Shown: positions 1 to 55,976 of the stretch, one piece after another
Layout of the letters: every line of letters begins with the position of its first letter
Position numbering within the stretch: position 1 is the first letter of the stretch
Source of the DNA: Laetmonice hystrix
Taxonomy: Eukaryota
Direction of reading: 5' to 3'
Length of the DNA: 64,000 nucleotides
NCBI GenBank assembly: GCA_965235115.1
Contig: OZ249446.1
Span: 16,864,001 to 16,928,000, forward strand
Position numbers and translations under genes: made by a program
The notes under the pieces: model-generated
The model's input: only the letters and a program-made list of their open reading frames with translations
The model's database searches: none
Told to the model about the DNA's origin: nothing

Positions 1-1206
1 GAGGGCACGTACATTTTTGAATCCCACTTTGATTGTCTCTACTTAAAGTTCTCAAATTAAAAAGTCTTCCAATTCTAAAAAGAACAGAATTAATTGCCCA
101 ATCCTACACCCCAAAGTGGGCAGAAGGCTTCAAGATGTGCTCCAATGTATCAGCAGCTTCTTACTGTATTTCTAGAGGGGGGAAGAGTAGGCCCCCTGGT
201 TGTCTTGGAAACCCATTTATAAACCCGCCTAGGGATAACACTAACGATCCTGTAGCTTGGTAACACTACAAAAATCCATGCGATGTGCAGTTTTATCTTC
301 CTTACCTGTCGTATGTTGTCATCAGTCGCAGAACTAGGACACGCACCATGAGGTGTTCGCTAATAGATTTGTACTTGGAGGCCTCAAATTGTAGCCAGCT
401 GGGCTCTATGGTGAAACATTACTGAAGGCTCAGCCAAAGGTTTGTTGGGATCGGCTAGAGGGACCTCTCCTGTCAGGAACTCTGATCTCTCATAATGCTT
501 CGCCTTAGTATTAGTTTTCAGTTTAATAAAGTAATTTTAGCAGGTCGTCGAAAAATAATTTTAGTCAGTATTTCAAGAAGTACACCACACTACATGGAGC
601 ACAGCTTTGGTTGACGTGGAGAAATAATCGGCCTTAGATATTTTCCAAGCATTGATTATATTGGGTTGCCTCCTTTATAAGAAGAAGAAAGAAGAAAAGG
701 TCGGGTTGTTCCTGTAGCACAGCGGCTCCATTCTTCTGTACCATTGATGGAATTCTTGACAACTTGACAACTCCTGATTTGTGGACGTCGACCAGTTCTG
801 GTTTCACTTGAAAAGATCGGAGTACATTGGGGAGAAATGTCAAGGAAAGCAATGGAATTGGAACCAGTGACAGACAGATATCGGCATGATATATAGATGT
901 AGGCGAGTTGTGACAGTGATTCATGGTGGCAGACAGAGGGTGTGGTGTTTTACTGGCAGACTTGGCGGGCAGGGACAATCGGCACTGATTACTCATGGCT
1001 GAAATCAGAGCAGGTTTCCCCTGGGGCCAGCAAAGTGCCGACAATGATGGACGCTTCTATCGGAATATTTGTCAAATATTACATTCTCAATGATTTCAGA
1101 ATGTCTTGATGTGGGCGTGTATCCATCATAGTATTCTGCTGAGTCCAACATCTACATTAAGTGTTTCCGTGTCCGATTCCTAATTCTGAAGTGCTTATTA
1201 AGGTGT

Positions 1207-2257
1207 TGCGTTGGGGTGTTTTCTTTTGGGACTTTGGTTTATATTAGAGATGTTTAGATGATGTTTATACTTTCCGTTCGTTCTTTGAGTTTGGGGTTTA
1301 AAGGTCCGTTCTCCACCAGGCTTGCGCCACTATTGTCATTTTACGAGAGGTACTAAGGTTCTTCCCAACGCTTAAAAGGGGCTAGCATCAAATGGTAGGG
1401 GTTCCACTCCTAAAGGTAAACGGTTATAGATGATTTCCCAGGTTCTACCACAACATCGACATCTGCGATAAAGTTCTACTATTTATTAACGATCCGTGAA
1501 CAATCCTTCGTCTTCTTGTGAGTACATGGGTTGGTGACGTGAATGAATACACTTGCGATATTATCCGATGAGTACAGAAACCAGACTAATAGGTAACACC
1601 GCTGAGGTAATATATTCCTTTGCCGAGCACTCTCAGGAGAATAACGGAATCCCCGTTCCGTTTCATATAACTTCCAGAACACTTCGTTTCACCAATATTC
1701 CGGGCACTAATACATGTACACTCTTAATCCATTGAACTTTCCAAACACTTGATAATCCGGCTCTCGTATACTCCCTCGTATAGTCCCGTAAATTCCGTTC
1801 TCTGGATCTTATCGTATCCCACAACCTAGTGAAGACCACCAGCTCACTCCTCTCTCCCACTTTCTGATCTTAAGACACTGCACTGCGCCTTTGATTCCTT
1901 CTATTTTCCTATTTATACCCCCCTTATTTTCGATCTATGTCAGTTTTCTCGATCTATGTCATGTCCTAACCTGCACTCTCCTCCTATTGGCCTAAAGTGT
2001 TACTGCCTCCTAATTATTCCGGCCTGGTTTCCTTTATCTATCTGGGTCTTAGTTCTCCTTCTCTGCTTGCCTATTGGTCTAAAGTGTTACTGCGTCCCAA
2101 TTATTCCGGCCTGGTTTCCTTTGCCTATCTGGGTCTTAGCTCCCCTTCTCTGCTCGCCTATTGGTCTAAAGTGTTACTGCGTCCCAATTATACCTCTCTC
2201 TATTTCTGCTCTGACTCTCAGGTTTCTGTTCTTATCCGACCCCAGTGTGCCAACACA
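1207..2257. repeat. Copy 1 of an apparently identical 1051-bp tandem duplication
   Basis: Matches 2323-3373 at offset 1116; ORF track shows identical ORFs at 1479/2595, 1553/2669 and 1663/2779. Confidence 0.97.
1983..2192. repeat. 87-bp tandem repeat, ~2.4 copies (also at 3099-3308)
   Basis: cctattgg(c/t)ctaaagtgttactgc unit starts at 1983, 2070 and 2157. Confidence 0.9.
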
Positions 2258-2322
2258 CCCGCCGGGTCCCCCTTTTAAATAATTTCCGCAGGGAATTATT
2301 TATACCCGGGTTCTCCACCAGA

Positions 2323-3373
2323 TGCGTTGGGGTGTTTTCTTTTGGGACTTTGGTTTATATTAGAGATGTTTAGATGATGTTTATACTTTCCGTTCGTTCT
2401 TTGAGTTTGGGGTTTAAAGGTCCGTTCTCCACCAGGCTTGCGCCACTATTGTCATTTTACGAGAGGTACTAAGGTTCTTCCCAACGCTTAAAAGGGGCTA
2501 GCATCAAATGGTAGGGGTTCCACTCCTAAAGGTAAACGGTTATAGATGATTTCCCAGGTTCTACCACAACATCGACATCTGCGATAAAGTTCTACTATTT
2601 ATTAACGATCCGTGAACAATCCTTCGTCTTCTTGTGAGTACATGGGTTGGTGACGTGAATGAATACACTTGCGATATTATCCGATGAGTACAGAAACCAG
2701 ACTAATAGGTAACACCGCTGAGGTAATATATTCCTTTGCCGAGCACTCTCAGGAGAATAACGGAATCCCCGTTCCGTTTCATATAACTTCCAGAACACTT
2801 CGTTTCACCAATATTCCGGGCACTAATACATGTACACTCTTAATCCATTGAACTTTCCAAACACTTGATAATCCGGCTCTCGTATACTCCCTCGTATAGT
2901 CCCGTAAATTCCGTTCTCTGGATCTTATCGTATCCCACAACCTAGTGAAGACCACCAGCTCACTCCTCTCTCCCACTTTCTGATCTTAAGACACTGCACT
3001 GCGCCTTTGATTCCTTCTATTTTCCTATTTATACCCCCCTTATTTTCGATCTATGTCAGTTTTCTCGATCTATGTCATGTCCTAACCTGCACTCTCCTCC
3101 TATTGGCCTAAAGTGTTACTGCCTCCTAATTATTCCGGCCTGGTTTCCTTTATCTATCTGGGTCTTAGTTCTCCTTCTCTGCTTGCCTATTGGTCTAAAG
3201 TGTTACTGCGTCCCAATTATTCCGGCCTGGTTTCCTTTGCCTATCTGGGTCTTAGCTCCCCTTCTCTGCTCGCCTATTGGTCTAAAGTGTTACTGCGTCC
3301 CAATTATACCTCTCTCTATTTCTGCTCTGACTCTCAGGTTTCTGTTCTTATCCGACCCCAGTGTGCCAACACA
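2323..3373. repeat. Copy 2 of the 1051-bp tandem duplication
   Basis: Starts tgcgttggggtg and ends gccaacaca, as does copy 1. Confidence 0.97.
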
Positions 3374-6109
3374 GTGTCATGAAATCAGAACTGGCTAGGG
3401 CAACGAAAGAAGAGTCAAACAAATTTGCTAGGTAATCTCGAAGACAAAACTTGGACTAAGAAAGGAGGCCAGGAACACGGTCAAAAATTGAGAAGGGAAA
3501 TGTTACACTCTTTGGAATCGCAAAAACGCAATCGGAAATCGATCATGTGAATGTCTTGTTGGTCACACAACACTAACAGGCGCATGGTATGGCTCACCGA
3601 GGGCCTTTTTATGTCCAGCCTTCGCACTGTGACCAGCCTTGTTATCCTGTGTGTAGGAGGGGAAACAGTTCCGAGGCCATGGTGTTGGTATCTGAGACCG
3701 ACGGCATTGAGGACCCTAGTGAGGTCATCATCAACTCACAGCGGAGCCCGTCACATGTTGTGCAAGACGGCGTCCAAATAAATGTAATAATATTGATTTT
3801 AAGCCGTTGAAAAACGGCGGATAGGAACATGATGGAAGCTACGGGTGGCAGGAGGGAGCGATGGCGTACGAAGGTTGAATAAATGTTGTCGTAAACTTTG
3901 GGCGCCGTTGTCGACACAGTAGGGATCATAATGTATTGGTACGACTCGCTCAGCAATGATGGCGCACTGTGTTGGTTTGACTTGGGAGACAGAGATCGGG
4001 TTTGTTACCATGGGTCATTTATGGGAACAATGGGATCCATGTTGAAGGATGGGGTGGGGGTGTTATGGGAGATTGGTCGGGGTGAGGACAATAGATGTCG
4101 CATTGTTACCGCTGGCTGCGAGTGTGACAGATTGTCCGGGTGAAGGCTCACAGAACCACAGCGCCACTCCCTCCACCTCCCCCACCCCAGAATTAGGGTT
4201 AATTAACATTAGGTCGTTTACTGCTACGGGTGCCGAGCGGCCGGTCCTTTGTTTCCACCTGTTAGGGTACATGGGGGCTGCATTTCCAGGGATTTCATGC
4301 TGCAAATGTAGCCACTTGGCGTGCTTAAGTTGTATATGGGAAAGGATTTTAATCGTTTGCTGCAGGTTGGTAGCTGAAGTGTAAAGTGGTGATGAGTGGA
4401 GAGGAGAACTTTATGGACCCGAGGAGGTCAGTGGGGGAAAGGTCACGTAGTTGGCGGAGTCTAAGTAACAGCATTATACTGTTGACAACAGTTGGCTTTT
4501 AAAATAAGATGGGCAAATCGATAACAGTAGTCAGCCGGACTGGGCGGTCTGAGGGCAGATTTAAAGTGTGTCAGTGGAATGGCCAGTGTCTGCCTGGCGG
4601 CTGGCGAAAGGAGCGAGGCTGGCAGTTTGGCCATCATTGTTTCTAGATGCATCTGGCATGCGAATCGGGGCGGTGTTATTTGATGTAATAGGTTCCGTTG
4701 TGAGGGTTTGCAAGCAGGACTTGATGGAGCAATAAGAGGGTGGAGTTGAAGGTGGACCACACTAGTCTGTTTTGATCCGTCAGGCGCCTAGTCTACCAGG
4801 TTCTACATAATAAGTGGACCTTTTTGTGAGAGTCAATCAATTGTACTCGCTACGTCAGTGAGCAAGTAAAGACCTTCTCCCTGGCGGTGGTGGTGGTTAG
4901 CTCAGTGTTTTGTAATAATTGCCTGATAAACTTCGCAATGATATTTTAAAGTTGGTGAAAGCTACCTTTAGGCTATGTATGGAAAGCTTATAGTACGATC
5001 AAGGCATCGTTTGTGACAAGGTTGTATAAAAATCGAAGAGGTCATTGCTTTATATGCATGAAAAAAATCAACATTGATCAAAGATAAAAACCTGGCCATA
5101 ATTTCCTGCTCTTATAATAACTGCTGGCGTTAACAGATTATAAAGAAACAATCGAAGGGGGATATGCGCTTGCTTAATTGAGAGCATCATCGTAGGGGTG
5201 CGTTAACATACTTTAGAGTTGCATAATTTATAAGGGCGCCCCCTTGGTCGTAAATTATGTGGAAATGACGTGCCTTGATTTTATCCATGCTCGACCCCAC
5301 GTGTTGGCCAGGCCTGATAATGCCAGTCCCATCATGCATCATTCTAGTGGTGTCCTCAGGGGTTCACAAGTTTTTAATCAGGCACCGAGGGGTTCATAGA
5401 CTGAGGCAGTGGACTGAACGGTTCGAGTCCCTTCTGGCGTCGTCTTCATAGGCGTGACATAAAGTTCGATGTTTTATGTCTTGACAGTCAGGTTTATGGG
5501 AGTGGCAAAGTTTTAATTACCTTTTTTAGGTCCTAAGGCCTTCACCCAGTTCATTACGCCGGGAACTAGTTAAATGTACCAGTAATAATCAATATGACTG
5601 TCGTACTGGCGTTCAGTTTTGAGAAGTATAACATTTCTGGTTATTTAAATGATGGAATAAAGAAAATGTGAACGGTTACTTTTTTGTCATCGGACGCAAA
5701 CTTTTGTGACACCCTGTAAATGACAAATCTTGAAGTCGTGGAGAAGCCTCACACCGTCGTGTAGACGCTGGTGTAGCGGTATGGGACAGATGGCGGAGTG
5801 AGCCGTCCTGATGGTGGGCCAGCTGCCGGAGCCACGCGTGCTGGCTGGGATGGCAAGGTCAGAGTTCATCATAGTAGGACGAGAAGGTCACACATTATGA
5901 GCATCATCTTATGCTATTGTAAGAACAACGGAAATCAGCGTGTAATCTTGGGAGTAGATGTGTTACCTTGATGGAATGCTGAGTCAAAACGGACAAATGC
6001 TAGGATAGGTTGCAAAAAAAAATAAATGTGTCAGCCTGCAACTACCCGGGCCATCGTTGGTTTCAACATGATGGCGTCTAACCCAGTCTGGGGGAAAAAG
6101 GAAACAGGC

Positions 6110-6329
6110 CAGGTTTACCAGTCTAACGAGGTCCACTGGGCTTTTACACAGTTGGTTCCATCCATACTAAAGGAGTCCGCATCTGCAGCCCGCTTCGTGC
6201 CTCGGAGTGGAGGTTCAGAGACCGGCATGAATACTGGTGCTGCCATCTGGAGATGGTGTAAGCAGATACGACTTGGGTTCAAAGGAAGGTTAAATACGAT
6301 CATGCACAGAAGGTATTGAAAAATACTTG

Positions 6330-6330
<1 letters not shown>
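6110..6330 (-). mobile_element. Possible DIRS-type tyrosine recombinase C-terminal remnant
   Basis: VSAYTISRW followed in another frame by LRGTKRAA...KAQWTS, resembling the TISRW...HSTR...AGWSS pattern. Confidence 0.3.
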
Positions 6331-6360
<30 letters not shown>

Positions 6361-6615
6361 AATACCAAAGCAAACCAGGTAAAAGACTATTTTCAATTCA
6401 AGAGTTTGAGTGGCACTGGGTGAGGCGAGAGTTTTAGATGGGTTGGTATCATTCGACAGGTTCGCCCTAATTAATAAACGACGATGATTACACATTGGCC
6501 GAGGGTTGGGCCAATGCTCCTCACCTGTCTTAAATATAGGCATCAATATCCCCCTACAATCTAGGACTACATTGTAGTTACACAAAAAGTTAAAGGCTCC
6601 ACTGCTATGTTCCAG

Positions 6616-7179
6616 GGTACCGGTTCTTCAAGGCGACCATGTTCCTGACCGGGTTCATGTTCGGCTCCGTTCTCACCTACCTCATCTGTCTGGAGGAAGA
6701 ACTGCTCCCACTGGAGGGCAAAGTGGGCGTGGCGCTGGCGGCTGGCCTCCTGTGCGGCCTCATCACCATGCTCGTCCAGTACGTAGGGCTCTTCATGACA
6801 GGCCTCCACTTCGGCCTGCTCATCGGCATCGCCGCCCTCGTTGTTATGGAGCAGTTCTACCACCCAACCACCAAGTGGATCACCATCGGAATATTGTTTG
6901 GTAATGGCTTACTGTGCGCCCTGCTGACGCTGTACTTCCAGAAGGGCCTTACCATCCTGGGAACCGCCATATTCGGCGCGGCGCAGATGACAACAGCGCT
7001 GGATTATTACGTGGAGATGTTTAAGATGGTACACTATGTGTGGGACAGAGTGAAAGCGGAGCCGGTGCGCCCGGTCTGTTGGTTCAGTTGGATCATACTC
7101 GGTCTATGGCCGGCTGCCTTCTTCATAGGAACACTCACTCAGTGGAGAGTGACCGGAAAGGGATTCTCTCACAATGAAG
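6616..7179 (+). CDS. TMEM198: TMEM198 (DUF4203 multi-pass membrane protein), large internal exon
   Basis: ttccag acceptor, then GYRFFKATMFLTGFMFGS...CWFSWIILGLWP...QWRVTGKGFSHNE, then GT donor at 7180; closely resembles vertebrate TMEM198. Confidence 0.95.
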
Positions 7180-7434
7180 GTTGGTTGTTTACTCCCGTCG
7201 TCATGGTGACAGCGTCTTCGTGTCAAAGGTTGCAACTCCAAATATTAAACCTCAAACCAGTGAGGTCACCAATTGTGATGTTTATGGCACCGTATCATTG
7301 TGCCATATATTTGGCATGTAGGTGATTTTGGGCAAGCTTTGGCAAAATGGATAGAATTTGCTAAAGTCACTTCCATTGATGGATCTTGTGTTATTGTTTG
7401 ATCTGGATAACATTGCTTTGTCATTTTGTTCTAG

Positions 7435-18716: not shown

Positions 18717-19625
18717 TTAAGTATCGGAGAAGACCAAACAAAACTTCCTTTTGTCGACCCGCCGTGCTTTTGAATTTCCTGGTATAATTGTATCCTAATA
18801 AAGCGAAGGAAACTCCGATATTCTCTACACGAAATTTTCTCATGAATGATTAACCGAAATTAACAGCGTTTTTAATTACGAGCTGAATTGTTTCCATTAT
18901 ATCTATCTATGTCCTTCAGTCGAAGGTTGTCGTTTCCGCCTGATTATTGCACACACTCTGGGAGTGTTGACCTTCCATACGTTACAATCTGGTTCTCTGG
19001 AAACTAGAAAAATACATCAAGTCGCTTATTTCACTTATTTACAAGGGTACACTAGTCATTGGAGATAACAAAAACAAAACTATTGAAAATAATCTTTCTT
19101 ACGTAAAAGTCGCACGATTTCACAGTTTTAACGAGTGGAAACTGCTCGGGAGGGGGGGGGGGTTACATATTTCCCTATTGCAAATGGACTTGGCTGAAAA
19201 TAAAGGAATATAAGTTCGATATTATTATCCAATATCTTTCTGTCTACAAGTTCTTCTTTCGTGTTTTATACATTTAAAATAAATTAGAAGGTTAAATATC
19301 GTGCATGATTGGTGGGAGTCGAGGCTTAGGGTATTACAAGCCCTGTATGTAGACCTAAATTTCACTAATTAGTAACCTTTCTTTCGTGAAAATAACAAAC
19401 TACGGTTTTTACAATGTCACAAGTTTATTGTGCATTAAAGGTGGAAAAAACGGAGGTCTAATTCTTATAAGGGGTTGAAGGTCCCCCCCCCACCATCTTT
19501 CAAAATCCTGAATCCGGCGCTGCAACACAATATAAAATATGTAGCCACAATCCTATTTAAAAACATATTCTAAATGTATACTCTAATTGATTCTTTCTTT
19601 TTCTTTTATTCTCCCCTAGAGGGGA

Positions 19626-19777
19626 GTGGGCCAATCCCGGAGGTACTGCAATACCGGGCCAACCCGTGGCGGTGGAGGAGTAAACCCCTGAGCCACCGCC
19701 CAGTTCCAAAAATCAGTTTAATATCGAAGCGGTGCATGCACCGCGTATCAGATATTAAGCTGATAAGAACAGATACT
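19626..19777 (-). ncRNA. U2: U2 snRNA 3' portion (approx. nt 36-187), separated from its 5' end by a retrotransposon
   Basis: Reverse complement reads AGTATCTGTTCTTATCAGCTTAATATCTGATACG..., Sm site AATTTTTG-type (TGATTTTTGG), stem-loops IIa, IIb, III and IV (GTATTGCAGTACC loop) intact. Confidence 0.98.
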
Positions 19778-19904
19778 TTTTTTTTTTTTTTTTAAAATAG
19801 CACTGCTTTATTCATTAAGACATTATTATTTACATTTCGCAGTGCTTTTCACAATGACAAATCATATCTTTTTCCAATTACAATAAATACTAAAATTAAC
19901 AAAT

Positions 19905-20030
19905 TAATGGGAGCAGCAGGCTTGCGGGGGGCCCTTGGTCTCCTGACTAGGGACATACCCCGTTGTGGGGCGCGAGTCGACCAAGTCCCGAAAAGGACTC
20001 GGGGCGAAAAAGGAAAAACCTGCCTATGAA
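19905..20030 (-). other. GC-rich, multi-helix structured element in the retrotransposon 3' UTR
   Basis: Complementary pairs GCAGG/CCTGC, CTTGGTC/GACCAAG, GGGAC/GTCCC, GCCCC/GGGGT and CGAGTC/GACTCG within an AT-rich UTR. Confidence 0.55.
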
Positions 20031-21325
20031 CAAAATAAGCTTTAAGGACAACAAAGATATAATTGGACAAAATTAAACAAATAACAATAATTAACAAACT
20101 TGCAGGGGTCCTTCTTTAATTCTTTGGCCTCTTTAACTAGAGACTCTAGTACCCGGTAAACGACCTAAAGGAAACCAACCTAACTTACAACTTAGAGACA
20201 AAACGTAACCAAGAACTCAATCATGCACCAAAATGCAAACTTTGAAACCGCAAATCAAAACAATGCAAAGAAACACATATCTAGGACCAAAGTCCATACT
20301 GCCCAACAAACCTAAAGGCAACTCATGCATTTTTTAACAAAGAGCTCAAACTCTAGAGGTAAAAGAAAAACACATATCACTGTCCAAGGGCCGTAATGTC
20401 AGACAAAACAAAAAATGCAACCCATGCACTTACATAAAGGCAAAGCAAATTGTTACTATAATCAGCATTTAGCTCCATATAGCTACCAAGTCCGACTTGC
20501 AACATAGTAACAAACAAACCAATAAATAACATCGACCACACTTAATCTTTCTTGGCCTATAATCAACAAAGGGCACAAACTCTAAATACAAGAAGATAAA
20601 CACATATCACTGACCAAAGTCCTTAGTACAAAACAGATCAAAAATGCAACTCATGCACTTACATAAGGACAAAGCATACTGTCACTATAATCTACCTTTA
20701 GTCTCATATGGACTAGCAAGTCCTGATATAAATCATGGTACCAAATAAATTTAACATCAGCCAAGCATCAATCTACTTTGGCCTATAATTAAAGGAGCTC
20801 CATGCAAACACAAGCTCAACATAAAGTAAATAAAAATAAATTAAGAATAATGACAAATTAACGCAACATGAAACCAAAACATATGCCTTCGTAATTACCC
20901 AACTCAATATGGGGTTGTATTCTTATCTTTACTAACACATCGCACTTAACTCCAACGTAACAAAATATCATAACATAGAAAGACTAGTTAAGCTTCTAAA
21001 TAACTCAACTATAACGTAGGATAAACGTTGTAGCAAAATAACAAACACAAATCAACATAAACCAAATACAACTAAGTAACAAACTATAACATAGGATAAA
21101 CTTTGTAATATAATAACGAAAACACATCAACATAATCCAAATACAACTAAGTAACTCAACTATAACGTAGGATAAACGTTATATCATAATAACAAAAACA
21201 AATCAACATAATCCAAAAACAACTTATAATTCGAATCTACCTTCATATATACTACCTGTTCTCAGGGATCCTGGTAGTTCTACAACAAAATATAACATCA
21301 ATTAATTAACTTATCAAACACTCTC

Positions 21326-24300
21326 TTATTGACTTAACAATCCTGCCATCTCCTCCTGAAACCAATCATACCATACATAATGGTTTTTAAGTTTAAGATC
21401 TTTATAGCGCACCCTGTCAGCTTTATACCTTCTTCTTATGAAACCAATCCAGCTTCTTCCCAAACCTTTAGTGTCTACAGACATTCTTTCATAAACTACT
21501 AGACATCTTTGGGTCCATATAACCTTCTTTAGTGAATGGACTAAAAACAAAATACTTGATTTAACAGGTGCAGAGCATGGAAAGGTAAAATAGGAATAAC
21601 AAATAGTAGGAATATCTACTATGAAGGGTTTACCTAGTAATCTCGCTATTACTCTACTCAACACATCGAGCAATGGAACTACCACTGGACAAAAAACAAA
21701 TAAGTGGTAAAAATCTTCCACACCTTTACAATCTCCTAAAGAACAAAGTGCATTTCCCCTCCCATATTTTGATATCCAAAAATGTTTTGTTGGGAAAATT
21801 CCATATGCTGCTCGGTAAGCACAATAAATTAAATCGTAACCCAAGAAAGGGTTAAACACATTCTGAAAGGTGACTGAAAAATTTACTCCTGGATAATTCC
21901 TGGGGGTAACTTTTGGTTTTATGCTCAAATTGACCAATTTTACATAAATATTCTTTGTAGTTTGATTGTTCCAATCAAACCCAGCTTCTACCATTTTCTC
22001 AAATTTTTGGAGAGCCTCTTTGTAAAACATCGGGACATAAACTGGAGGCATTAGAACTGTATCCCTCCTAAGAGCTCTTAATCTAAACCTAGTCCAAAAC
22101 AATGCATAGTCCTTCCATTTATGGTCAAAATCATCATTTAGTATTTTACAAATGTGGCCTATCCTAAACGCCACTAGCTTAAGACCAACTTCCACCAGCC
22201 TTATTCCCCCATCTCTATAGTCTAAATGAAGTGTATTCCTAGCTATGTATTCATGTCCTCCACCCCACACAAAGTTAAAAATAATAGTTCTAATCTTTTT
22301 AACATAATATTCCGGGATGTCTAAGACATGTCCGACATACCATACTTTTGATAACCCCACACTATTTGCTATTTTCCCTCTCCCAATTAAAGTCAGTGCT
22401 CGTCCATTCCAACTATCTAAAGTTGTCTTTAGCTTCCCTACGACTCTTTCCCAATTCAATTGTTCTATCTTATAACCTTTGTCATCTACCTCCCCTTCTA
22501 TTTCCTTATCCGTCTTTGAGAAAAAATAAACTCCTAATAATTTAATGGGTTGGTTTGAGAATGAAATACCTTCAATCATTACTGTGTTTCTATATTTCAG
22601 TCTCCCCACCCACAATCCTCTACACTTATTCTTGTTTAACCCACCCCCTGCTACACTAGCATACGCTTCACATTCTCCTAAAACATATCTGACTGCTGTC
22701 TCGTCCTCCAAAACACACGTTAAATCATCAGCAAAAGAAACCATCTTAACTCTATTACTGGTGAAAGGTGATCTAATGCCTATAATTCTTTCATTAGCTT
22801 TAATTGCCAACAACAGAGGTTCTATTACAAGAACATAAAGCAATGGTGACAATGAGCACCCCTGTCTAACAGATCGACTAATCGGAAAAGGACGGGTAAG
22901 AAACCCATTAACTAAAACCTGACTATTACACCCGTTATATAATAAACGGACAAAATTGATTATATACGGTCCAAACCCGTATGCTTCTAGGCATTTAAAA
23001 AGGAATTCATGGCTCACACAATCAAATGCTTTTCTTTGGTCAAGACTGAGCAATACTCCCGTTGCATTAGTAGTGTCAACAAAATCAATAATATTCCGGA
23101 GTAAATGTAAATTATCCTGAATAGCCCTGTGGGGAACTGCACATGCTTGTTCTTTAGAAACCAACAAGTGTAATACCTTTTTTAACCTATTAGTTAGACT
23201 TTTAGAAATTATTTTATAATCAACATTGAGGAGACTAATAGGTCTCCAAGACCTCAGGTTATTTTTGTCTTCCCGGTTTTTACAAATGAGTCTGACATAA
23301 CCTAATTTTTGACTTTCCGTTAATGATCCAGTAACATAGTTATTATTAATCATTTCAGTAAGAAATGGTCCAATCACGTTAATATATCTCTTATAAAATT
23401 CGACTGGTAAACCATCTGGCCCAGGAGCTTTATTGAATTTCATTGCTTTGACAGTTCTTTTGACCTCCTCTAAGGAGATAAGTCCTTCCAAATTGTCAGA
23501 ATCTACTTGATCTAGCTTGGGCAACCTATTTAAAAAATACTGTTCAAAGGTTCTGTCACTGGGAACCTTGGAAAAAAGTGATCTATAAAAACGATGACAT
23601 TCCTCAAGGATATCTTCATTTTTACTTACAATTCCTCTTTCTGTTTCTAAAGCAGAAATATATTTGTCAGCCGCATTACGGCTTTCTTTAATTCTAAAAT
23701 ATTGCGAAGGTTGTTCAGCATTATCTAGATCAATAACTCTAGATCGTATGATTTCACCTTCAATTTTCTTTTGTTGGGCCTGTTTTAGGCTTTCTTTAAC
23801 ATTATCTAAAATATTGACATAAATACCTGGAGATTGTTTTTCTTTCTCCATAATTTGATGCAAGGCACTTTCTAAATTTTGAATTTCTAAATTTCTTTGT
23901 GCACTTAAACGTCTCGAATGCTTAATAATCAGTTTTTTAATTTCCTTTTTGCAATAATCCCACCACTCCCCGTCGAAAAATTCATCTTTTGAAAGGGTTG
24001 ATGACCAAAGAACTTTAAATTCATTATTAAAAAGAGCGTCTTCTAAAACTTCAATGTTGCATTTCCAATATCCGGGCCCTCTAGGGCTCTGACATTGGTG
24101 AAAATTAATTTCACAAAAAACTAAATGGTGATCTGAAAAACTCACCTCTATTGTCGACATATTTTGAAGTTCATTAACGACAGTTTTGGTTGTATAAATC
24201 CTATCCAGTCTTGTAAAAACATTTTCAGCTTTAGAATGGTAGGTAATAATAACTTTGTTCGGATCAAGAACTCTCTGAATATCAACTAAATTGTGGGAAT

Positions 24301-24808
24301 CTTTAAATAATTTAAACTCATTAATGCCAATGTTACCTCTTTGAGGGTTTCCACCAATTTTGTCGAGAGTTAAGTTCTCAACAAAATTGAAATCGCCACC
24401 TACAAATAAAACCCTTGTAGTAAAACATAGACGGTTTAAAACCTCTATAAAGGCTACTCTCTCATGTGGTAAGCACGGTAAATAAATATTGACAAAACGA
24501 ACTGCCACTCCCATTAAAATTCCGTCCACTATGACATATCTGCCAGAATCATGTGTTCTTACCGAAGTAACTTCACAGTCTAATTTACTAGAAATAATGA
24601 TTGAAACTCCACAACTAAAAGAGGAGCCGAAACTAGAGAAGATAAACCCGTCTGTGGCTTGCTCCCATTCTCTGTTGTGACTTTGGGCAGTAAAGTGGGT
24701 TTCTTGTAAGAAACAGACATCTAATCTTTTTCTATGAAAAATTTCCGAGAATAATCTGACTTTATCCCCCCTTAACCCTCCATTGACATTTAAAGTGGCC
24801 AATCTCAT
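21326..24808 (-). CDS. Retrotransposon ORF2: APE endonuclease, reverse transcriptase and C-terminal CCHC finger (1160 aa)
   Basis: APE: TLNVNG, LQETH, GGDFN, RLDRIY, SDHH. RT: KAPGPDGLP, WRPISLLNVDYK, DQRKAFD, RQGCSLSP, FADD. C-terminus: C..C...EDFYHLFVFC. Confidence 0.98.
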   Translation of the reverse strand: MRLATLNVNGGLRGDKVRLFSEIFHRKRLDVCFLQETHFTAQSHNREWEQATDGFIFSSFGSSFSCGVSIIISSKLDCEVTSVRTHDSGRYVIVDGILMGVAVRFVNIYLPCLPHERVAFIEVLNRLCFTTRVLFVGGDFNFVENLTLDKIGGNPQRGNIGINEFKLFKDSHNLVDIQRVLDPNKVIITYHSKAENVFTRLDRIYTTKTVVNELQNMSTIEVSFSDHHLVFCEINFHQCQSPRGPGYWKCNIEVLEDALFNNEFKVLWSSTLSKDEFFDGEWWDYCKKEIKKLIIKHSRRLSAQRNLEIQNLESALHQIMEKEKQSPGIYVNILDNVKESLKQAQQKKIEGEIIRSRVIDLDNAEQPSQYFRIKESRNAADKYISALETERGIVSKNEDILEECHRFYRSLFSKVPSDRTFEQYFLNRLPKLDQVDSDNLEGLISLEEVKRTVKAMKFNKAPGPDGLPVEFYKRYINVIGPFLTEMINNNYVTGSLTESQKLGYVRLICKNREDKNNLRSWRPISLLNVDYKIISKSLTNRLKKVLHLLVSKEQACAVPHRAIQDNLHLLRNIIDFVDTTNATGVLLSLDQRKAFDCVSHEFLFKCLEAYGFGPYIINFVRLLYNGCNSQVLVNGFLTRPFPISRSVRQGCSLSPLLYVLVIEPLLLAIKANERIIGIRSPFTSNRVKMVSFADDLTCVLEDETAVRYVLGECEAYASVAGGGLNKNKCRGLWVGRLKYRNTVMIEGISFSNQPIKLLGVYFFSKTDKEIEGEVDDKGYKIEQLNWERVVGKLKTTLDSWNGRALTLIGRGKIANSVGLSKVWYVGHVLDIPEYYVKKIRTIIFNFVWGGGHEYIARNTLHLDYRDGGIRLVEVGLKLVAFRIGHICKILNDDFDHKWKDYALFWTRFRLRALRRDTVLMPPVYVPMFYKEALQKFEKMVEAGFDWNNQTTKNIYVKLVNLSIKPKVTPRNYPGVNFSVTFQNVFNPFLGYDLIYCAYRAAYGIFPTKHFWISKYGRGNALCSLGDCKGVEDFYHLFVFCPVVVPLLDVLSRVIARLLGKPFIVDIPTICYSYFTFPCSAPVKSSILFLVHSLKKVIWTQRCLVVYERMSVDTKGLGRSWIGFIRRRYKADRVRYKDLKLKNHYVWYDWFQEEMAGLLSQ

Positions 24809-24868
24809 TATGGGCTAGGATGGAAAAAAAAACAACTAGTATTACACTTTTAACTAATAGATCTTCAT

Positions 24869-24970
24869 TTACATCCTACCATCATAACCAACCAACACAA
24901 CATACAATAGTCTCACCTTCTCTCCTCTTAACCCTCCATTATCATTGACATTGAAAGTGACCAATCTCAT
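24869..24970 (-). other. 33-aa mini-ORF duplicating the ORF2 N-terminus
   Basis: MRLVTFNVNDNGGLRGEKVRLL... versus ORF2 MRLATLNVNGGLRGDKVRLF; offset 162 bp. Confidence 0.85.
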
Positions 24971-25079
24971 TAAGGGCCAGGATGGAGAAAGATAGTTTTA
25001 ACATTAGTTCATCATTTTCATCTTACCGTCATAATCAACCAACAAACATTGATACAAATTACAATTTACAATCACCCCT

Positions 25080-26639
25080 TCATAGGGGTTCGTTACCTTC
25101 CCCTGGATCCAAAACATCAGCGGATCTTCGGTGCTCCCTCGATAGAGAGTGCCGCCCCCGTCCGCCTCTCCTACTGGGAGTACCCACTCCCCCCACTACA
25201 CGAGCCCTCCGATGAGGCTCTTCCTCCTCCACCTCCTGGGTGAAAAGAGAGTCCTGCGAGGGAGGAATTACCTCCAGGTCTGACCCTTTCTCTCCTTCCG
25301 ACACCACCACCATTTCCACCACTTGTTTCTCTTGTGTTTCTGACCATGTAGACATCTGGTCTACTATGTCACTGTTACCATCACTCTCCGAGTCAGAACC
25401 TGGAGAACCTGTCAACCTCAACTTTAGCACCTCAGTCTCTGACTGGGTGTTATCTACCACCTCACCTTTACCTTTTTTTCCGCCCCTTTGCTCCTCCTGT
25501 CCTCTCTTTGACCTTTTGCCAACACCTTTGTTTTTTTTTTTCCTCTCACTCTCTTCACTCCCATCACTCTGTACACCTTCTACTAACCGTTTGCTTATGA
25601 CGTCATCATCCATGGGCACTTCCCGCCCCCCAACTGCTCGTAACCTTCTGTTCAACTCACCGTAAGCTCTAACTCTCGCTTCATCCATTTGTTTTTGCAG
25701 CTCCTCTGCCGTCCGGGGCACCCACAAGCTTCCTCCCGCTACTGGTTCGACCTCCCGACCTACCAGACCTTTCTTAACCTTATCTGACCACAACACAGGC
25801 TGTTCATGGCCCTGTTTGTTTTGCCCTTGTCTGTCCTTACCACATTCTCTCACAATATGTCCTGCTTGGAGACATCTTCTGCACACCTGTACACGGCCTG
25901 GTATCGTAACCAGCGCCGTGAACGACCTACCTCCAAACACAGTCTCAAAGAAATGAGGCACTTCATCCATCTTCTCCTCCTCTATTTCCATTCTCAGTCG
26001 TCTCACACCATTATCAACATCTGCCTCACCTCTCGCCTTTTCTCTGACCAGGGAACAAACTTTACCAAATCTTGACATAAAATCACGTATGGCACCATCC
26101 GGCACAAAACTTGGCAGCCATAGCACCCGTACTAAGGTGGTCTGTGGAGTCCACGCAACTGTGGCACTCCCCTCCACCCACTTTGCCACTGGCCTACATG
26201 GACAGTCAAATCCAGAGATTCTTAGAACCTCTGGAAACAGGGCTAAGTCTTCCTTAGCGGCAACAGTAACAAAGAAAACACTAGAGTTTTCCCTCACTTG
26301 TCTGGTTATAGTTACAACCTTACGAAAGTGCCTTGTAGTGAGGGTGGCCTTAACACCTGCTACCACCTCCTCTCTGGCAATATAACGTTGAGGTGGAGTT
26401 ATTTCTACCGTTCTGAAAACCTCATTGGACTCCCTAGCCTCATAGGTCTCACCTGTTGTTAGCAGTATCTCCACCGACGACTCCCCCGTCGAACCGCCGG
26501 CTTCATTTTGCACTCCAACTTGACAAATGGCGGCGCCCACGGCCTGCCGACCCACTTCCGGCCTCACCGCACGATGTTGGTCCACGGGGGAGCCGCCAGG
26601 AACGCCACCTACACCTTCAATGATCATGGCCTCTGCCAT
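25080..26639 (-). CDS. Retrotransposon ORF1 (RRM-like region plus CCHC zinc knuckle, 519 aa)
   Basis: VRVLWLPSFVPDGAIRDFMSRFGKV and CRRCLQAGHIVREC (CX2CX4HX4C), typical of Tx1/L1 ORF1. Confidence 0.93.
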   Translation of the reverse strand: MAEAMIIEGVGGVPGGSPVDQHRAVRPEVGRQAVGAAICQVGVQNEAGGSTGESSVEILLTTGETYEARESNEVFRTVEITPPQRYIAREEVVAGVKATLTTRHFRKVVTITRQVRENSSVFFVTVAAKEDLALFPEVLRISGFDCPCRPVAKWVEGSATVAWTPQTTLVRVLWLPSFVPDGAIRDFMSRFGKVCSLVREKARGEADVDNGVRRLRMEIEEEKMDEVPHFFETVFGGRSFTALVTIPGRVQVCRRCLQAGHIVRECGKDRQGQNKQGHEQPVLWSDKVKKGLVGREVEPVAGGSLWVPRTAEELQKQMDEARVRAYGELNRRLRAVGGREVPMDDDVISKRLVEGVQSDGSEESERKKKNKGVGKRSKRGQEEQRGGKKGKGEVVDNTQSETEVLKLRLTGSPGSDSESDGNSDIVDQMSTWSETQEKQVVEMVVVSEGEKGSDLEVIPPSQDSLFTQEVEEEEPHRRARVVGGVGTPSRRGGRGRHSLSREHRRSADVLDPGEGNEPL

Positions 26640-26783
26640 GGTGGGCAGAGCCGTCTAGCGGCACTACTGTAAACACAACTTTATAACAAGCACAGCAACA
26701 ACAGTATTGAAATCGAACAATCTTTACACGATCTCCGTAGGGGAGTTAATCAACAAAAACGGCTTCTAGACCTTAAGGGCCCG

Positions 26784-26815
26784 CTTTGATCTTAGCCAAA
26801 AGGCCGAGAAGCGAT
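26784..26815 (-). ncRNA. U2: U2 snRNA 5' portion (nt 1-32)
   Basis: Reverse complement ATCGCTTCTCGGCCTTTTGGCTAAGATCAAAG is the canonical U2 5' end. Confidence 0.98.
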
Positions 26816-53740: not shown

Positions 53741-55976
53741 GACATGGGCGGATCCAGGGATTATTTTAGGCGGATCACGGAGGGTATTGGTCGCAACCGC
53801 TCTTGGAAAGTAATGTTTGTAGGCTTTTGTCGGGTTTAGGGGGGCATAGGCTTGGTCTGACAATAAGCAGGTTCTAAGGCATGTAACACTCATAACATGG
53901 GTTACCAAACGTATAAAAAGTTACACTGCCCATATGGACATGATGTATGTACATAAGGGTATTTATAACAGTCTGGATTTAATACGTGAAATCAGGTCGA
54001 AGGATAACAAGCTTAGGGTGAAAGGCCATCGAGTCATTAGATTAGTCATTATTTGAACATAATCAGGGGTAATAATTTAATCCTCACCAAATTGGGTCTA
54101 AATATTCGACACCGCGGTGCAACTATTCTAAACAGGGGATGGGGGCTAATGTTATTGAGAGTACAGCGTGATGTGTCACACCGAATATTATGAGCGTCAT
54201 ACTACATAATCTGAGGGCGCTGGCTGGCTCCCAGGTCCAGTAAAGCAATGAAGGGGCGATGAGGAGCGGAGGGGGGGGGGGGGTCTGTATAAATGAACTC
54301 GTCAGCGCCTGCTCATCGCTGAATTGATCATAATATAGTGTGAAGTATAGGGAGTGCAGTTGTCTGTAGATGAGGCTGTTAGTGGCAGTAATTGCATACG
54401 CTCATATTATGGCCTAAGTGTGACGTTTATCCCCTGATGGAAATTTGCTTTTCATGTGTGGCAGTGCACCGCTTGACAGGTCTGCAGATATGATAGAACC
54501 AACATCATCGCCAACTTTGTGATGTATGAATATTTTTGCATGATAAAAACACGGGGACAAAAGATGAGGACACTCTTGGTGTCGCGTATCACGGAAGCTT
54601 TGCACAGCATCATAAGTGCAGCATCCCATGTTTTGTCTCATACACACTCTGCCTACATACAGGGTGTGTAAAAAAAGTATATACATGTACTCCGAAAAAT
54701 GAACCAGAAACGAATCTTCTATTATGGTTCGCAATAGGAAATGCTACATATTTATGCAACAGCAGATCGCGGATTCATTACGTAACAACCTCATGCAGTG
54801 GTTAATTAAATATGCCTCTCATGGTCTCTGATCCTCTTTTTCGTGCGCAAGTTAATTTTAACAAGGTTGACTAAACTGGCCCCTGTTCACACACACGTGA
54901 AATGTGGGAAATGGTCATCATGTGTTCAAAAGCGTCAAGTCTTCGTCTCCGAATATGTCTGGACCAATATTATTTTCTGAAAATTATACTGGGTTCAGTT
55001 TTTTTTCTGCGTGTATATTTTTTATTATGCACCCTGTATATATCTACATCCCTATGTACAGGACACAATCGGTGAAGCGCGAACATTTTCGTTGTCCACG
55101 GAGACCCTGGAACCCTCCTGGCTCAGCGTCAGGTCAGAGATGAACAAGTGGGCGGTCTGCTACAATATGATACACATATACTGCGGCGCCATAATTGTTG
55201 AGTCCACTCGATGTTCTGTTGATTGACTTGGCGCGCCTGGAGAGCAGCGCCGCACAGTTCAAACCCCGCTAACTGTGGCTGGAGAATGGGCACCGTTTCA
55301 CGGAGCCTGCCCGGTGCCATGTGTTGAGGAAGCGTGCAAGGGCGCACGTGTAGATCTAGAACCCGGCAGATGTGACTGGCCAGTGGCGGAAACTTGACGT
55401 GCGTTCAGAGGGCGCGGGGGATATATGGTTTCAGAAACCAGACTCAACCCGCAGTCGGGGCTGGAACCAATCTTGCCCGATCAATGGATAAAGACTTATA
55501 AACAAAGGTCCCATGCCATCCGTGCCAGTCATAGCATCGAGAGACGACAACAGTTCCGGGTGAAGACAACACAGCATGGCGTGGACGTACAAGGAGCAGA
55601 CGGAAAGCGTTGAAATGACCCAAGTAGAATGAGACAGTACTCTGTCCGACAGACGGTGAAACATTGGTGTAGACCCATGGGTCAAAACTATACGGCCGTG
55701 CCTGGCACTGTACCAAGTATACGGCACAGAATCTCACAACAACCAAGCTGAGCGCGTAAGTTGGTTTAGAAGATTTAACTACAAGTTTACACATGGGAAC
55801 TATTCCAACTCTTTAAGGCCTACAACTCGGCGCGTTAAGTGTTCCATATATCACGGACACTTTGAAAAGGGCGCGATGAAGTGGTATATGTTTCCGTGAG
55901 ATTTATTTCACCAAATAGTCTGGTTAGCAGTCACTACAACAATAGCAAGAAAAGCGTTTGCTGCTTCGGACTAAAC

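What the first reader, a model, noticed from the sequence alone, without database searches (positions are those of the whole stretch)
19626..26815. Spliceosomal U2 snRNA gene split by an intact, full-length site-specific retrotransposon
Seen: U2 nt 1-32 (26815-26784), a ~7.0-kb element with two uninterrupted ORFs and a polyA tail, then U2 from about nt 36 to the end (19777-19626). Rejoined, the halves give a ~187-nt U2 with intact stems and Sm site. Established: Tx1-clade APE-type elements include U2-specific families (Keno); Utopia also targets U2 but uses a restriction-like endonuclease, which is not seen here. So the class is known. This copy stands out as fully coding among decayed TEs, so it is probably recently active, and it is a candidate sequence-specific APE-RT for genome-writing studies in a lineage where it may be undescribed.
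Basis: partly seen in the sequence, partly recalled or inferred. Interest (0 to 1): 0.8.

Follow-up and report, generated by a model that had tools for sequence, protein, structure and literature searches.

The report
U2-gene-specific LINE, intact copy
An intact 7-kb LINE-type retrotransposon sits in the branch-point-recognition sequence of a U2 snRNA gene, and about 15 other copies in this spiralian (lophotrochozoan) genome share that junction, so it is a Keno-like, site-specific element of a known kind in a probably unreported host group.

Summary
A U2 snRNA gene on the minus strand is split after nt 32 (26815-26784) and resumes at nt 37 (19776-19621). Between the halves lies a 7,007-bp element: 144-nt 5'UTR, ORF1 (519 aa), ORF2 (1160 aa), a 1.5-kb 3'UTR, AATAAA and a pure A17 tail.

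The insertion is site-specific, not chance.
- Genome-wide there are 12 exact and 4 near-exact poly(A)/U2-nt37 junctions, against 17 intact U2 genes.
- 15 of 17 element 3' ends carrying the conserved terminal motif lie at that position.
- Lineages only 50-60% identical in protein use the same site.
- A 36%-identical relative in another assembly also sits in U2.

ORF2 keeps all catalytic residues and matches human L1 ORF2p along most of its length. Its best Swiss-Prot match is Xenopus Tx1 ORF2. ORF1 has two RRM folds plus a CCHC knuckle (Type I). Copies differ mostly at synonymous sites (dN/dS 0.05-0.2), so these are long-lived lineages under selection.

It works like Keno and is probably a Keno/Tx1 member. 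No tree with named references could be built, so membership by descent is unproven. The host is a lophotrochozoan; Keno is published from vertebrates, lancelet and Hydra. Verdict: new member of a known kind, moderate interest.

The parts
26784..26815 (-). U2 snRNA gene, nt 1-32 (5' half of the split gene)
26772..26783 (-). 12-nt filler between U2 nt 32 and the conserved element 5' end (GTCTAGAAGCC...)
   Evidence: Other lineages start with GTCT(A/G)GGAGGC directly after U2 nt 49. These 12 nt have no counterpart there. Whether they are untemplated or part of this subfamily's 5'UTR is unresolved.
26640..26783 (-). 5'UTR, 144 nt including the filler
   Evidence: The part next to the ORF1 start resembles the 5'UTR of the L050 and L037 lineages.
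25080..26639 (-). ORF1, 519 aa, Type I ORF1p: two RRM folds (about aa 77-245), a CCHC knuckle (aa 252-265) and a charged tail
   Evidence: The ORF is open. The CX2CX4HX4C motif is visible, and the Pfam zf-CCHC matches are below threshold. The AF2 model (pLDDT 75) matches tandem-RRM proteins UP1, HuR and Sxl at E 2e-7 to 1e-5.
24809..25079 (-). Inter-ORF spacer, 271 nt; ORF2 is in a different frame from ORF1
   Evidence: ORF coordinates.
21326..24808 (-). ORF2, 1160 aa: APE endonuclease, reverse transcriptase, C-terminal CCHC
   Evidence: Pfam Exo_endo_phos E 5e-12 and RVT_1 E 5e-33. Matches human L1 ORF2p over aa 3-875, E 9e-76. AF2 model pLDDT 88. Best Swiss-Prot match is Tx1 ORF2 P14381, E 2e-67.
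24128..24799 (-). APE endonuclease domain (aa 4-227), catalytic residues present
   Evidence: N7, E36, D139, N141, D202, D226 and H227 fall in invariant or nearly invariant columns of the 40-sequence alignment A1.
22526..23266 (-). Reverse transcriptase domain (aa 515-761) with the FADD active-site motif (aa 692-695)
   Evidence: D530, A693, D694 and D695 are invariant.
21689..21745 (-). C-terminal CCHC motif of ORF2 (C1022, C1027, H1035, C1040)
   Evidence: Invariant columns in A1. Homologues carry Pfam zf-RVT.
19794..21325 (-). 3'UTR, about 1.5 kb, with internal repeats
   Evidence: A 76-bp x 3 tandem repeat lies at 20996-21224. The last 460 nt are 96% identical to the 3' end of a lineage whose ORF2 is only 66% identical in nucleotides.
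19793..19812 (-). Conserved 3'-terminal motif AATAAAGCAGTGCT(A/G)TTTTA, holding the poly(A) signal; its GCAGTGCT can pair with an upstream AGCACTGC
   Evidence: 14 exact copies genome-wide. A hairpin is predicted in every lineage. Covariation is not demonstrable because the 3' arm never varies.
19777..19793 (-). Poly(A) tail, 17 uninterrupted A; the last A could instead be U2 A36
19621..19776 (-). U2 snRNA gene, nt 37-192 (3' half: second half of the branch-point-recognition sequence, stem-loops, Sm site)
   Evidence: Rfam RF00004 alignment. 97.7-99.4% identical to the intact U2 copies.

Best explanation
This is a full-length, coding-intact, U2-gene-specific non-LTR retrotransposon of the L1/Tx1 supergroup, working like Keno.

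Inferred mechanism, by analogy with L1 and Tx1L:
- The APE domain of ORF2p recognises the conserved U2 sequence around the branch-point-recognition motif GTA|GTA. It nicks the bottom strand opposite nt 36/37.
- The freed 3'-OH primes reverse transcription of the polyadenylated element RNA (target-primed reverse transcription). This fixes the 3' junction at poly(A)/G37.
- Second-strand cleavage is usually 13 nt downstream, after nt 49. That gives a 13-bp duplication of nt 37-49, regenerates the target and allows head-to-tail stacking.
- 5' joining is sloppy. In the window copy it removed nt 33-36 and added 12 nt. In the second intact element (L091) it removed nt 29-36.
- ORF1p (two RRMs and a CCHC knuckle) presumably coats the RNA.

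Shown here: the anatomy, intact catalytic residues, the invariant 3' junction, variable 5' junctions, the duplications and tandem stacks, and purifying selection. Inferred only: the nick position and the enzyme's specificity, the source of transcription (an internal promoter or the U2 promoter), and present-day activity.
For: - Anatomy.
- Catalytic and zinc-binding residues fall in invariant alignment columns.
- ORF2 matches human L1 ORF2p over aa 3-875 at E 9e-76, against R2 at 1e-27. No R1 or TRAS endonuclease chain reached the E 1e-3 cutoff.
- Swiss-Prot fold search: Tx1 ORF2 comes first (E 2e-67, 22% identity), then L1 ORF2 (about 5e-61), then jockey and R1 (about 1e-30).
- ORF1 has tandem RRM folds plus CCHC.
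- Census: 12 exact and 4 near-exact poly(A)/nt37 junctions on C4, C12 and C20, against 17 intact U2 genes.
- 15 of 17 motif-bearing 3' ends are at U2.
- 5' junctions fall after nt 49 at three loci. Poly(A)+nt37-49+next-5'-end tandems occur at L029 and L050. The L091 5' junction is after nt 28.
- Relative P0249 (36% identity, NCBI GCA_029979845.1) has its 5' junction in U2 after nt 45.
- dN/dS is 0.05-0.2 with pS 0.08-0.38 between the window copy and other copies.
- Published Keno is an APE-type, U2-specific Tx1-clade family (PMC4494074, PMC4640811).
Against: - No phylogeny with named Keno, Tx1 or L1 references was possible. The margin of Tx1 over L1 is small.
- The closest outside relatives are unnamed metagenome or Logan proteins of at most 40% identity.
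- The Utopia figure, which the paper says shares Keno's 3' flank, shows that flank beginning 2-3 nt further downstream (TCTGTTC...) than here (GTATCTG...). The exact published Keno junction could not be read.
- No near-identical sibling copy, no RNA run and no independent sample exists, so current activity is unproven.
- Some U2-cluster copies are segmental duplicates, so the 16 junctions are fewer than 16 independent events.
Confidence: 0.85

Rival explanations
1. It is a U2-specific APE-type LINE that reached the U2 site independently of Keno. On this reading it is an L1-like or separate lineage outside the Tx1 clade, much as RLE-type Utopia reached the same site by convergence.
For: Tx1 leads L1 only narrowly in the Swiss-Prot fold search. 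The nearest relatives are unnamed. In the tree, U2- and U1-associated relatives are interleaved, so target switches occur easily in this group. The 3' junction may lie 2-3 nt from the published Utopia/Keno flank.
Against: The best named match is Tx1 ORF2 over the full length. ORF1 is Type I, as described for Tx1-like animal elements (PMC5203782). Keno is already recorded from cnidarians to vertebrates (PMC4494074), and the nearest ESM Atlas cluster is mostly cnidarian.
Confidence: 0.18
2. A generic LINE landed in U2 once by chance, and the other U2-flanked copies are DNA-level duplicates of that single event through array amplification or segmental duplication.
For: Most copies lie in one 1.3-Mb region of C4 that flanks the U2 array. 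Several loci are clear segmental duplicates, for example L027/L028 and L029/L087.
Against: Lineages differing by 40-50% in ORF2 protein share the same 3' junction. Tails and 5' junctions differ between copies (nt 28, 32, 49). Copies lie on three chromosomes. Tandem stacks with nt 37-49 between elements need repeated insertion. A relative in another genome is also in U2.
Confidence: 0.02
3. The intact copy is an assembly artefact: a chimeric join of U2 halves and element pieces.
Against: The structure is coherent: both U2 halves are in register, the tail is pure and both ORFs are open. A second full-length element (L091) with the same architecture lies in an array-type U2 unit. Three runs of the sample hold 59-64% of the sampled words of the stretch.
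Confidence: 0.02

Closest known systems
Keno (U2 snRNA gene-specific Tx1-clade non-LTR retrotransposons: fish and frog Keno, lancelet Tx1-5_BF, Hydra Tx1-1_HM)
   Same: APE endonuclease plus RT in ORF2, a separate ORF1, a poly(A) tail, and specific insertion in the conserved 5' region of U2 genes with a precise 3' junction and variable 5' junctions (PMC4494074, PMC4640811).
   Different: The host is a lophotrochozoan, a group not among the hosts listed in the papers read. The best outside protein identity is 40%. The 3' flank starts at GTATCTG, possibly 2-3 nt upstream of the flank shown for Utopia and said to be shared by Keno. Descent from Keno was not shown by phylogeny.
Tx1L of Xenopus laevis (Swiss-Prot P14381, ORF2)
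   Same: Best named match over the whole ORF2 (E 2e-67, residues 2-1153 against 4-1276). It is also a site-specific APE-type element.
   Different: Only 22% identity. Tx1L targets the Tx1D DNA transposon, not U2 (PMC4494074).
Utopia (U2-specific RLE-type non-LTR retrotransposons)
   Same: Same target gene and essentially the same site within the branch-point-recognition region, with a precise 3' junction and variable 5' junction (PMC4640811).
   Different: Utopia has a single ORF with a C-terminal restriction-like endonuclease and no APE domain. Here an N-terminal APE domain is present and no restriction-like nuclease was found.
Human/mammalian LINE-1
   Same: ORF2p matches along aa 3-875, from the endonuclease into the region beyond the RT domain (E 9e-76). 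It also has a C-terminal CCHC, a bicistronic layout and a poly(A) tail.
   Different: L1 has a Type II ORF1p (Transposase_22) and only a loose TTTT/A target preference. Here ORF1 is Type I and the target is a single site in U2.

Membership tests
Keno (U2-specific Tx1-clade LINE) | ORF2 with an N-terminal APE-type endonuclease followed by RT | tested here: met
   Pfam Exo_endo_phos aa 4-227 and RVT_1 aa 515-761. Catalytic residues are invariant in A1. L1 endonuclease structures match at E 5e-17.
Keno (U2-specific Tx1-clade LINE) | Most copies inserted at one specific site of U2 snRNA genes | tested here: met
   16 poly(A)/nt37 junctions. 15 of 17 motif-bearing 3' ends are at U2 and 2 are elsewhere.
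Keno (U2-specific Tx1-clade LINE) | Same nucleotide position of the 3' junction as published Keno | tested here: inconclusive
   Kojima & Fujiwara 2004 is not held. PMC4640811 says Keno and Utopia share the 3' flank. Utopia's S1 Fig shows a flank starting TCTGTTC or ATCTGTTC, 2-3 nt downstream of GTATCTG seen here.
Tx1 clade | RT domain groups with Tx1 references in a phylogeny (RTclass1-type criterion) | not testable with these tools
   No named Tx1, Keno or L1 sequences could be obtained. As a proxy, the best Swiss-Prot match is Tx1 ORF2, narrowly ahead of L1.
Tx1 clade | Type I ORF1p (RRM plus CCHC knuckle) rather than Transposase_22 | tested here: met
   CCHC at aa 252-265. Tandem RRM folds. 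No Transposase_22 hit. The association with Tx1 comes from PMC5203782.
Utopia (RLE-type U2-specific) | C-terminal PD-(D/E)xK restriction-like endonuclease and no APE domain | tested here: not met
   An APE domain is present. The C-terminus carries only a CCHC motif and helices. R2-type proteins align only over the RT.
R1/TRAS group (APE-type site-specific LINEs of the R1 clade) | ORF2 closest to R1/TRAS-type proteins | tested here: not met
   R1 entries score E 1e-27 to 1e-30, against 1e-67 for Tx1. No R1Bm or TRAS1 endonuclease chain passed E 1e-3.
L1 clade sensu stricto (vertebrate type) | Type II ORF1p (coiled coil, RRM, CTD; Pfam Transposase_22) | tested here: not met
   No Transposase_22 match even at E 5. 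ORF1 has two RRMs and a CCHC knuckle.

The most novel reading that the evidence does not exclude
The window element belongs to a wider, undescribed radiation of snRNA-gene-specific APE-type LINEs that switch between U2 and U1 genes. Several lineages, long diverged and under purifying selection, coexist in one U2 gene cluster. They exchange 3' end modules and are at least sometimes transcribed from the snRNA promoter, as shown by U2-derived 5' heads on one lineage.
Probability: 0.3. Interest if true: 0.6.

Novelty: new member of a known kind. Interest (0 to 1): 0.45.

Why it matters
U2-specific APE-type LINEs (Keno) are a described class, so the principle is not new.

What this locus adds:
- A natural, fully coding copy with both junctions, plus a second intact element from a lineage 60% identical in ORF2 protein. 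This gives two divergent enzymes for one 13-20-nt target, which is useful for working out how an L1-type endonuclease reads sequence.
- A host group, Lophotrochozoa, outside the published Keno range. That supports an ancient or widely spread family.
- A genome in which about half of the U2 gene copies are interrupted while a homogeneous 12-copy array stays clean. This is a small-scale parallel to R1/R2 in rDNA, and bears on how a parasite persists on a low-copy target.

The insertion point lies in the middle of the branch-point-recognition sequence GUAGUA. That explains why the target is invariant across eukaryotes and why two unrelated nucleases converged on it.

Tried and rejected
- **Named-reference RT phylogeny.** The word-index search, the exhaustive representative search and two cluster look-ups returned almost only unnamed metagenome or Logan proteins. 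No Keno, Tx1 or L1 reference could be brought in. A Swiss-Prot fold search served as a proxy.
- **Read support.** Junction support from reads is therefore missing.
- **Sequencing runs.** Only four runs of one sample and study hold the stretch, and none is RNA. There is no independent sample and no expression evidence.
- **Related families elsewhere in the genome.** Their targets remain unknown.
- **3'-terminal hairpin.** Each lineage folds one. RNAalifold did not recover it, and the pair count shows no two-sided covariation because the 3' arm is invariant. I do not claim it as shown.
- **U2 promoter.** The upstream flank of the window's U2 gene has no clear shared promoter element with the other U2 loci. 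This is inconclusive.
- **Other checks.** The first outside relative examined (L090) is not in U2. The 2004 Keno paper is not held. Earlier findings of the scan returned nothing. The organism behind GCA_029979845.1 could not be identified.
Full report
**1. What is in the sequence**

On the minus strand, Rfam finds U2 at 19621-19804 with 128 bits against a gathering score of 46. Only the part from 19776 downward is real U2. The bases above it are 17 A (19777-19793).

This genome's own intact U2 genes, taken from 17 full-length hits, carry one extra A compared with human U2. With that numbering, the window has nt 1-32 at 26815-26784 and nt 37-192 at 19776-19621. Only TGTA (nt 33-36) is missing.

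The break falls inside GTA|GTA, the branch-point-recognition sequence. That identification is established knowledge of U2, not something tested here.

The 7,007 bp between the halves contain, in order:
- a 12-nt filler;
- a 5' end (GTCTAGAAGCC...) that resembles the 5' ends of sister lineages;
- ORF1, 519 aa;
- a 271-nt spacer;
- ORF2, 1160 aa, in another frame;
- a 1.5-kb 3'UTR with a 76-bp x 3 repeat;
- AATAAA and the tail.

**2. The proteins**

ORF2 has Exo_endo_phos and RVT_1 domains. In a 40-sequence alignment its APE catalytic residues (N7, E36, D139, N141, D202, D226, H227), the RT residues D530 and ADD 693-695, and the C-terminal C1022/C1027/H1035/C1040 all sit in invariant or nearly invariant columns.

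ORF2 matches human L1 ORF2p over aa 3-875 at E 9e-76. R2 proteins match only the RT, at 1e-27 or weaker, and no R1Bm or TRAS1 endonuclease chain reached the E 1e-3 cutoff.

An AF2 model (pLDDT 88) finds Xenopus Tx1 ORF2 first in Swiss-Prot (E 2e-67, 22% identity, full length). Mammalian L1 ORF2 follows (about 5e-61, 19-20% identity). Jockey and R1 come far behind (about 1e-30).

ORF1 has no Pfam hit above threshold. It shows a CX2CX4HX4C knuckle at aa 252-265. Its central 180 residues fold as two RRMs that match UP1, HuR and Sxl. This is a Type I ORF1p, the type described for Tx1-like elements of non-mammalian animals (PMC5203782).

**3. Site specificity**

The genome is 627 Mb in 35 contigs, and the window is C12:16864001-16928000.

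- Exact-match census: GTGTA+GTATCTGTTCTTA occurs 18 times. Sixteen of these are intact genes and two carry an insertion after nt 49. AAAAA+GTATCTGTTCTTA occurs 12 times, with 4 one-mismatch variants inside the C4 cluster.
- The junctions lie on C4 (35.58-36.88 Mb), C12 (the window) and C20.
- All lineages end in the conserved motif AATAAAGCAGTGCT(A/G)TTTTA. Of 17 such ends, 15 are followed by U2 from nt 37. Thirteen of these keep at least 12-13 nt of U2 and two keep 5-8 nt before another element begins. Two ends, at C5:25871009 and C20:6982590, lie in unrelated sequence.

The junctions cannot all be DNA duplicates of one event:
- Lineages with 60% and 50-56% ORF2 protein identity use the same junction.
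- Tails differ between copies.
- 5' junctions differ: after nt 32 in the window, after nt 28 in the second intact element L091, and after nt 49 at three other loci.
- Head-to-tail stacks occur, in which the poly(A) of one element is followed by nt 37-49 and then the 5' end of the next (L029, L050).

The nt 37-49 segment is the expected 13-bp target-site duplication. Because it restores the target, re-insertion is possible.

**4. Selection and age**

No other copy of the window's subfamily is intact. The nearest copies are 91-97% identical in nucleotides and carry a few stops.

Differences between the window copy and every other copy are overwhelmingly synonymous. For the C4:35.78 Mb copy, pS/pN is 0.19/0.014 in ORF1 and 0.08/0.004 in ORF2. 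Overall dN/dS is 0.05-0.2.

The copies therefore sample several lineages that diverged while under functional constraint. This is not the debris of a single burst. The intact ORFs, the pure A17 tail and U2 halves 98-99% identical to functional copies fit a fairly young insertion. Present activity is not shown.

**5. Setting in the genome**

Twelve intact U2 genes form a tandem array with a 7.41-kb period at C4:36.528-36.610 Mb. The interrupted copies and element debris flank this array. Five further intact copies are dispersed on C3, C4:27.6 Mb (two), C4:35.79 Mb and C8.

The window's U2 gene is a solitary locus. Its upstream flank shows no clear similarity to the others.

**6. Relatives elsewhere**

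The best outside protein is 40% identical and the next are about 36%. None carries a name.

- The contig of P0249 (NCBI GCA_029979845.1) shows U2 nt 1-45 directly before the element's 5' end.
- The contig of P0247 appears to have U1 snRNA halves on both sides, and that of P0242 to start with a U1 5' part. I recognised U1 from memory, and Rfam support is weak (E 0.25), so this is a lead.
- In a quick ML tree, window+L091 (100), joined by P0241 (100), are sister to P0247+P0244 (92). All lie in a 20-row clade (97) with P0249 and P0242.

**7. Host**

An HSP70 exon from C13 is 77-79% identical to its best named matches, which are annelid, mollusc, brachiopod and nemertean proteins. The host is therefore a lophotrochozoan, and I could not place it more precisely.

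Published Keno hosts are fish, frogs, lancelet and Hydra (PMC4494074, PMC4640811). Literature searches found no report from this group.

**8. Comparison and verdict**

The element works like Keno and meets every Keno feature that could be tested. Two points are open:
- RT phylogeny against named references;
- whether the 3' junction is identical to the published one or 2-3 nt away.

It is not Utopia, because it has an APE domain and no restriction-like nuclease. It is not an R1-type element, and it is not a vertebrate-type L1, because its ORF1 is Type I.

Novelty: a new member of a known kind. It adds value as an intact natural pair of divergent enzymes for one target, and as a picture of a multi-lineage community living on a low-copy gene family.

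Noticed in passing
L097 (ENA ERZ27293417 contig, element of P0247) 1-28 and 5628-5663; L094 (Logan SRR31781133, P0242) 1-32: Two outside relatives, 35-36% identical in ORF2, seem to sit in U1 snRNA genes. L097 has a U1-like 5' part before its 5'UTR and a U1-like continuation straight after its poly(A). In the papers read, only the DNA transposon Dada-U1 was listed as U1-specific. I recognised U1 from memory, and the Rfam U1 hit is weak (E 0.25).
   Followed up: partly
L095 3486-3530 (NCBI GCA_029979845.1, JARPNL010004796.1): A 36%-identical element with ORF1 (414 aa) and ORF2 (1153 aa) begins directly after U2 nt 45 in another assembly. This makes it a second U2-specific relative outside this genome. 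The organism was not identified.
   Followed up: partly
L091 = G000:C4:36616500-36624000 (element about 908-7333): A second full-length element with both ORFs open (463 and 1166 aa) lies in an array-type U2 unit, with its 5' junction after U2 nt 28. Its ORF2 is 60% identical in protein (66% in nucleotides) to the window's, yet its last 460 nt are 96% identical. This points to a recent exchange of the 3' end between lineages.
   Followed up: partly
L088/L030 (G000:C4:36864.7 kb) and L052 (C4:35591.6 kb): One sister lineage (50-56% identical ORF2) carries a copy of the U2 5' region at its own 5' end, placed after the nt 37-49 duplication. This is as expected if the element RNA started at the U2 promoter (co-transcription).
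   Followed up: partly
G000:C4:36528401-36610143: A tandem array of 12 intact U2 genes with a 7.41-kb period. Interrupted U2 copies and element debris lie on both sides (C4:35.58-35.83 and 36.39-36.88 Mb). About half of all U2 copies in the genome are interrupted.
   Followed up: partly
L055, L056, L057, L060, L062, L063 (C4:35.633, 35.779 and 36.713 Mb): At three loci, a copy of the window's subfamily starts at the same internal point (ORF1 codon 68) and is joined to the same point in ORF2 of a diverged element. These are either duplicated composites or a chimeric element that itself moved.
   Followed up: no
G000:C1:21923144-22004897; also C3:13.63 and 13.72 Mb, C5:25.95 Mb: A family 38% identical in ORF2 has many uninterrupted copies, seven of them within 80 kb on C1. 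It may be another site-specific lineage living in a tandem gene family.
   Followed up: no
window 19795-19850 and the equivalent 3' ends in L018-L052: Every lineage can fold a hairpin in which the invariant GCAGTGCT, just after AATAAA, pairs with a variable upstream arm, with A-U/G-U and G-C/G-U changes. No two-sided covariation is seen, so the structure is not shown.
   Followed up: yes
window 55881-57584 (+) and 6639-7325 (+): Host genes near the element: a 567-aa open frame with a rhodopsin-type 7TM receptor domain, and an exon with a TM7S3/TM198 domain.
   Followed up: partly
G000:C35:4760-6100 (L092): Mitochondrial COX1 with 12 in-frame TGA codons, so TGA reads as Trp. ARAGORN with bacterial settings found no tRNA in the surrounding 4.3 kb.
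   Followed up: no
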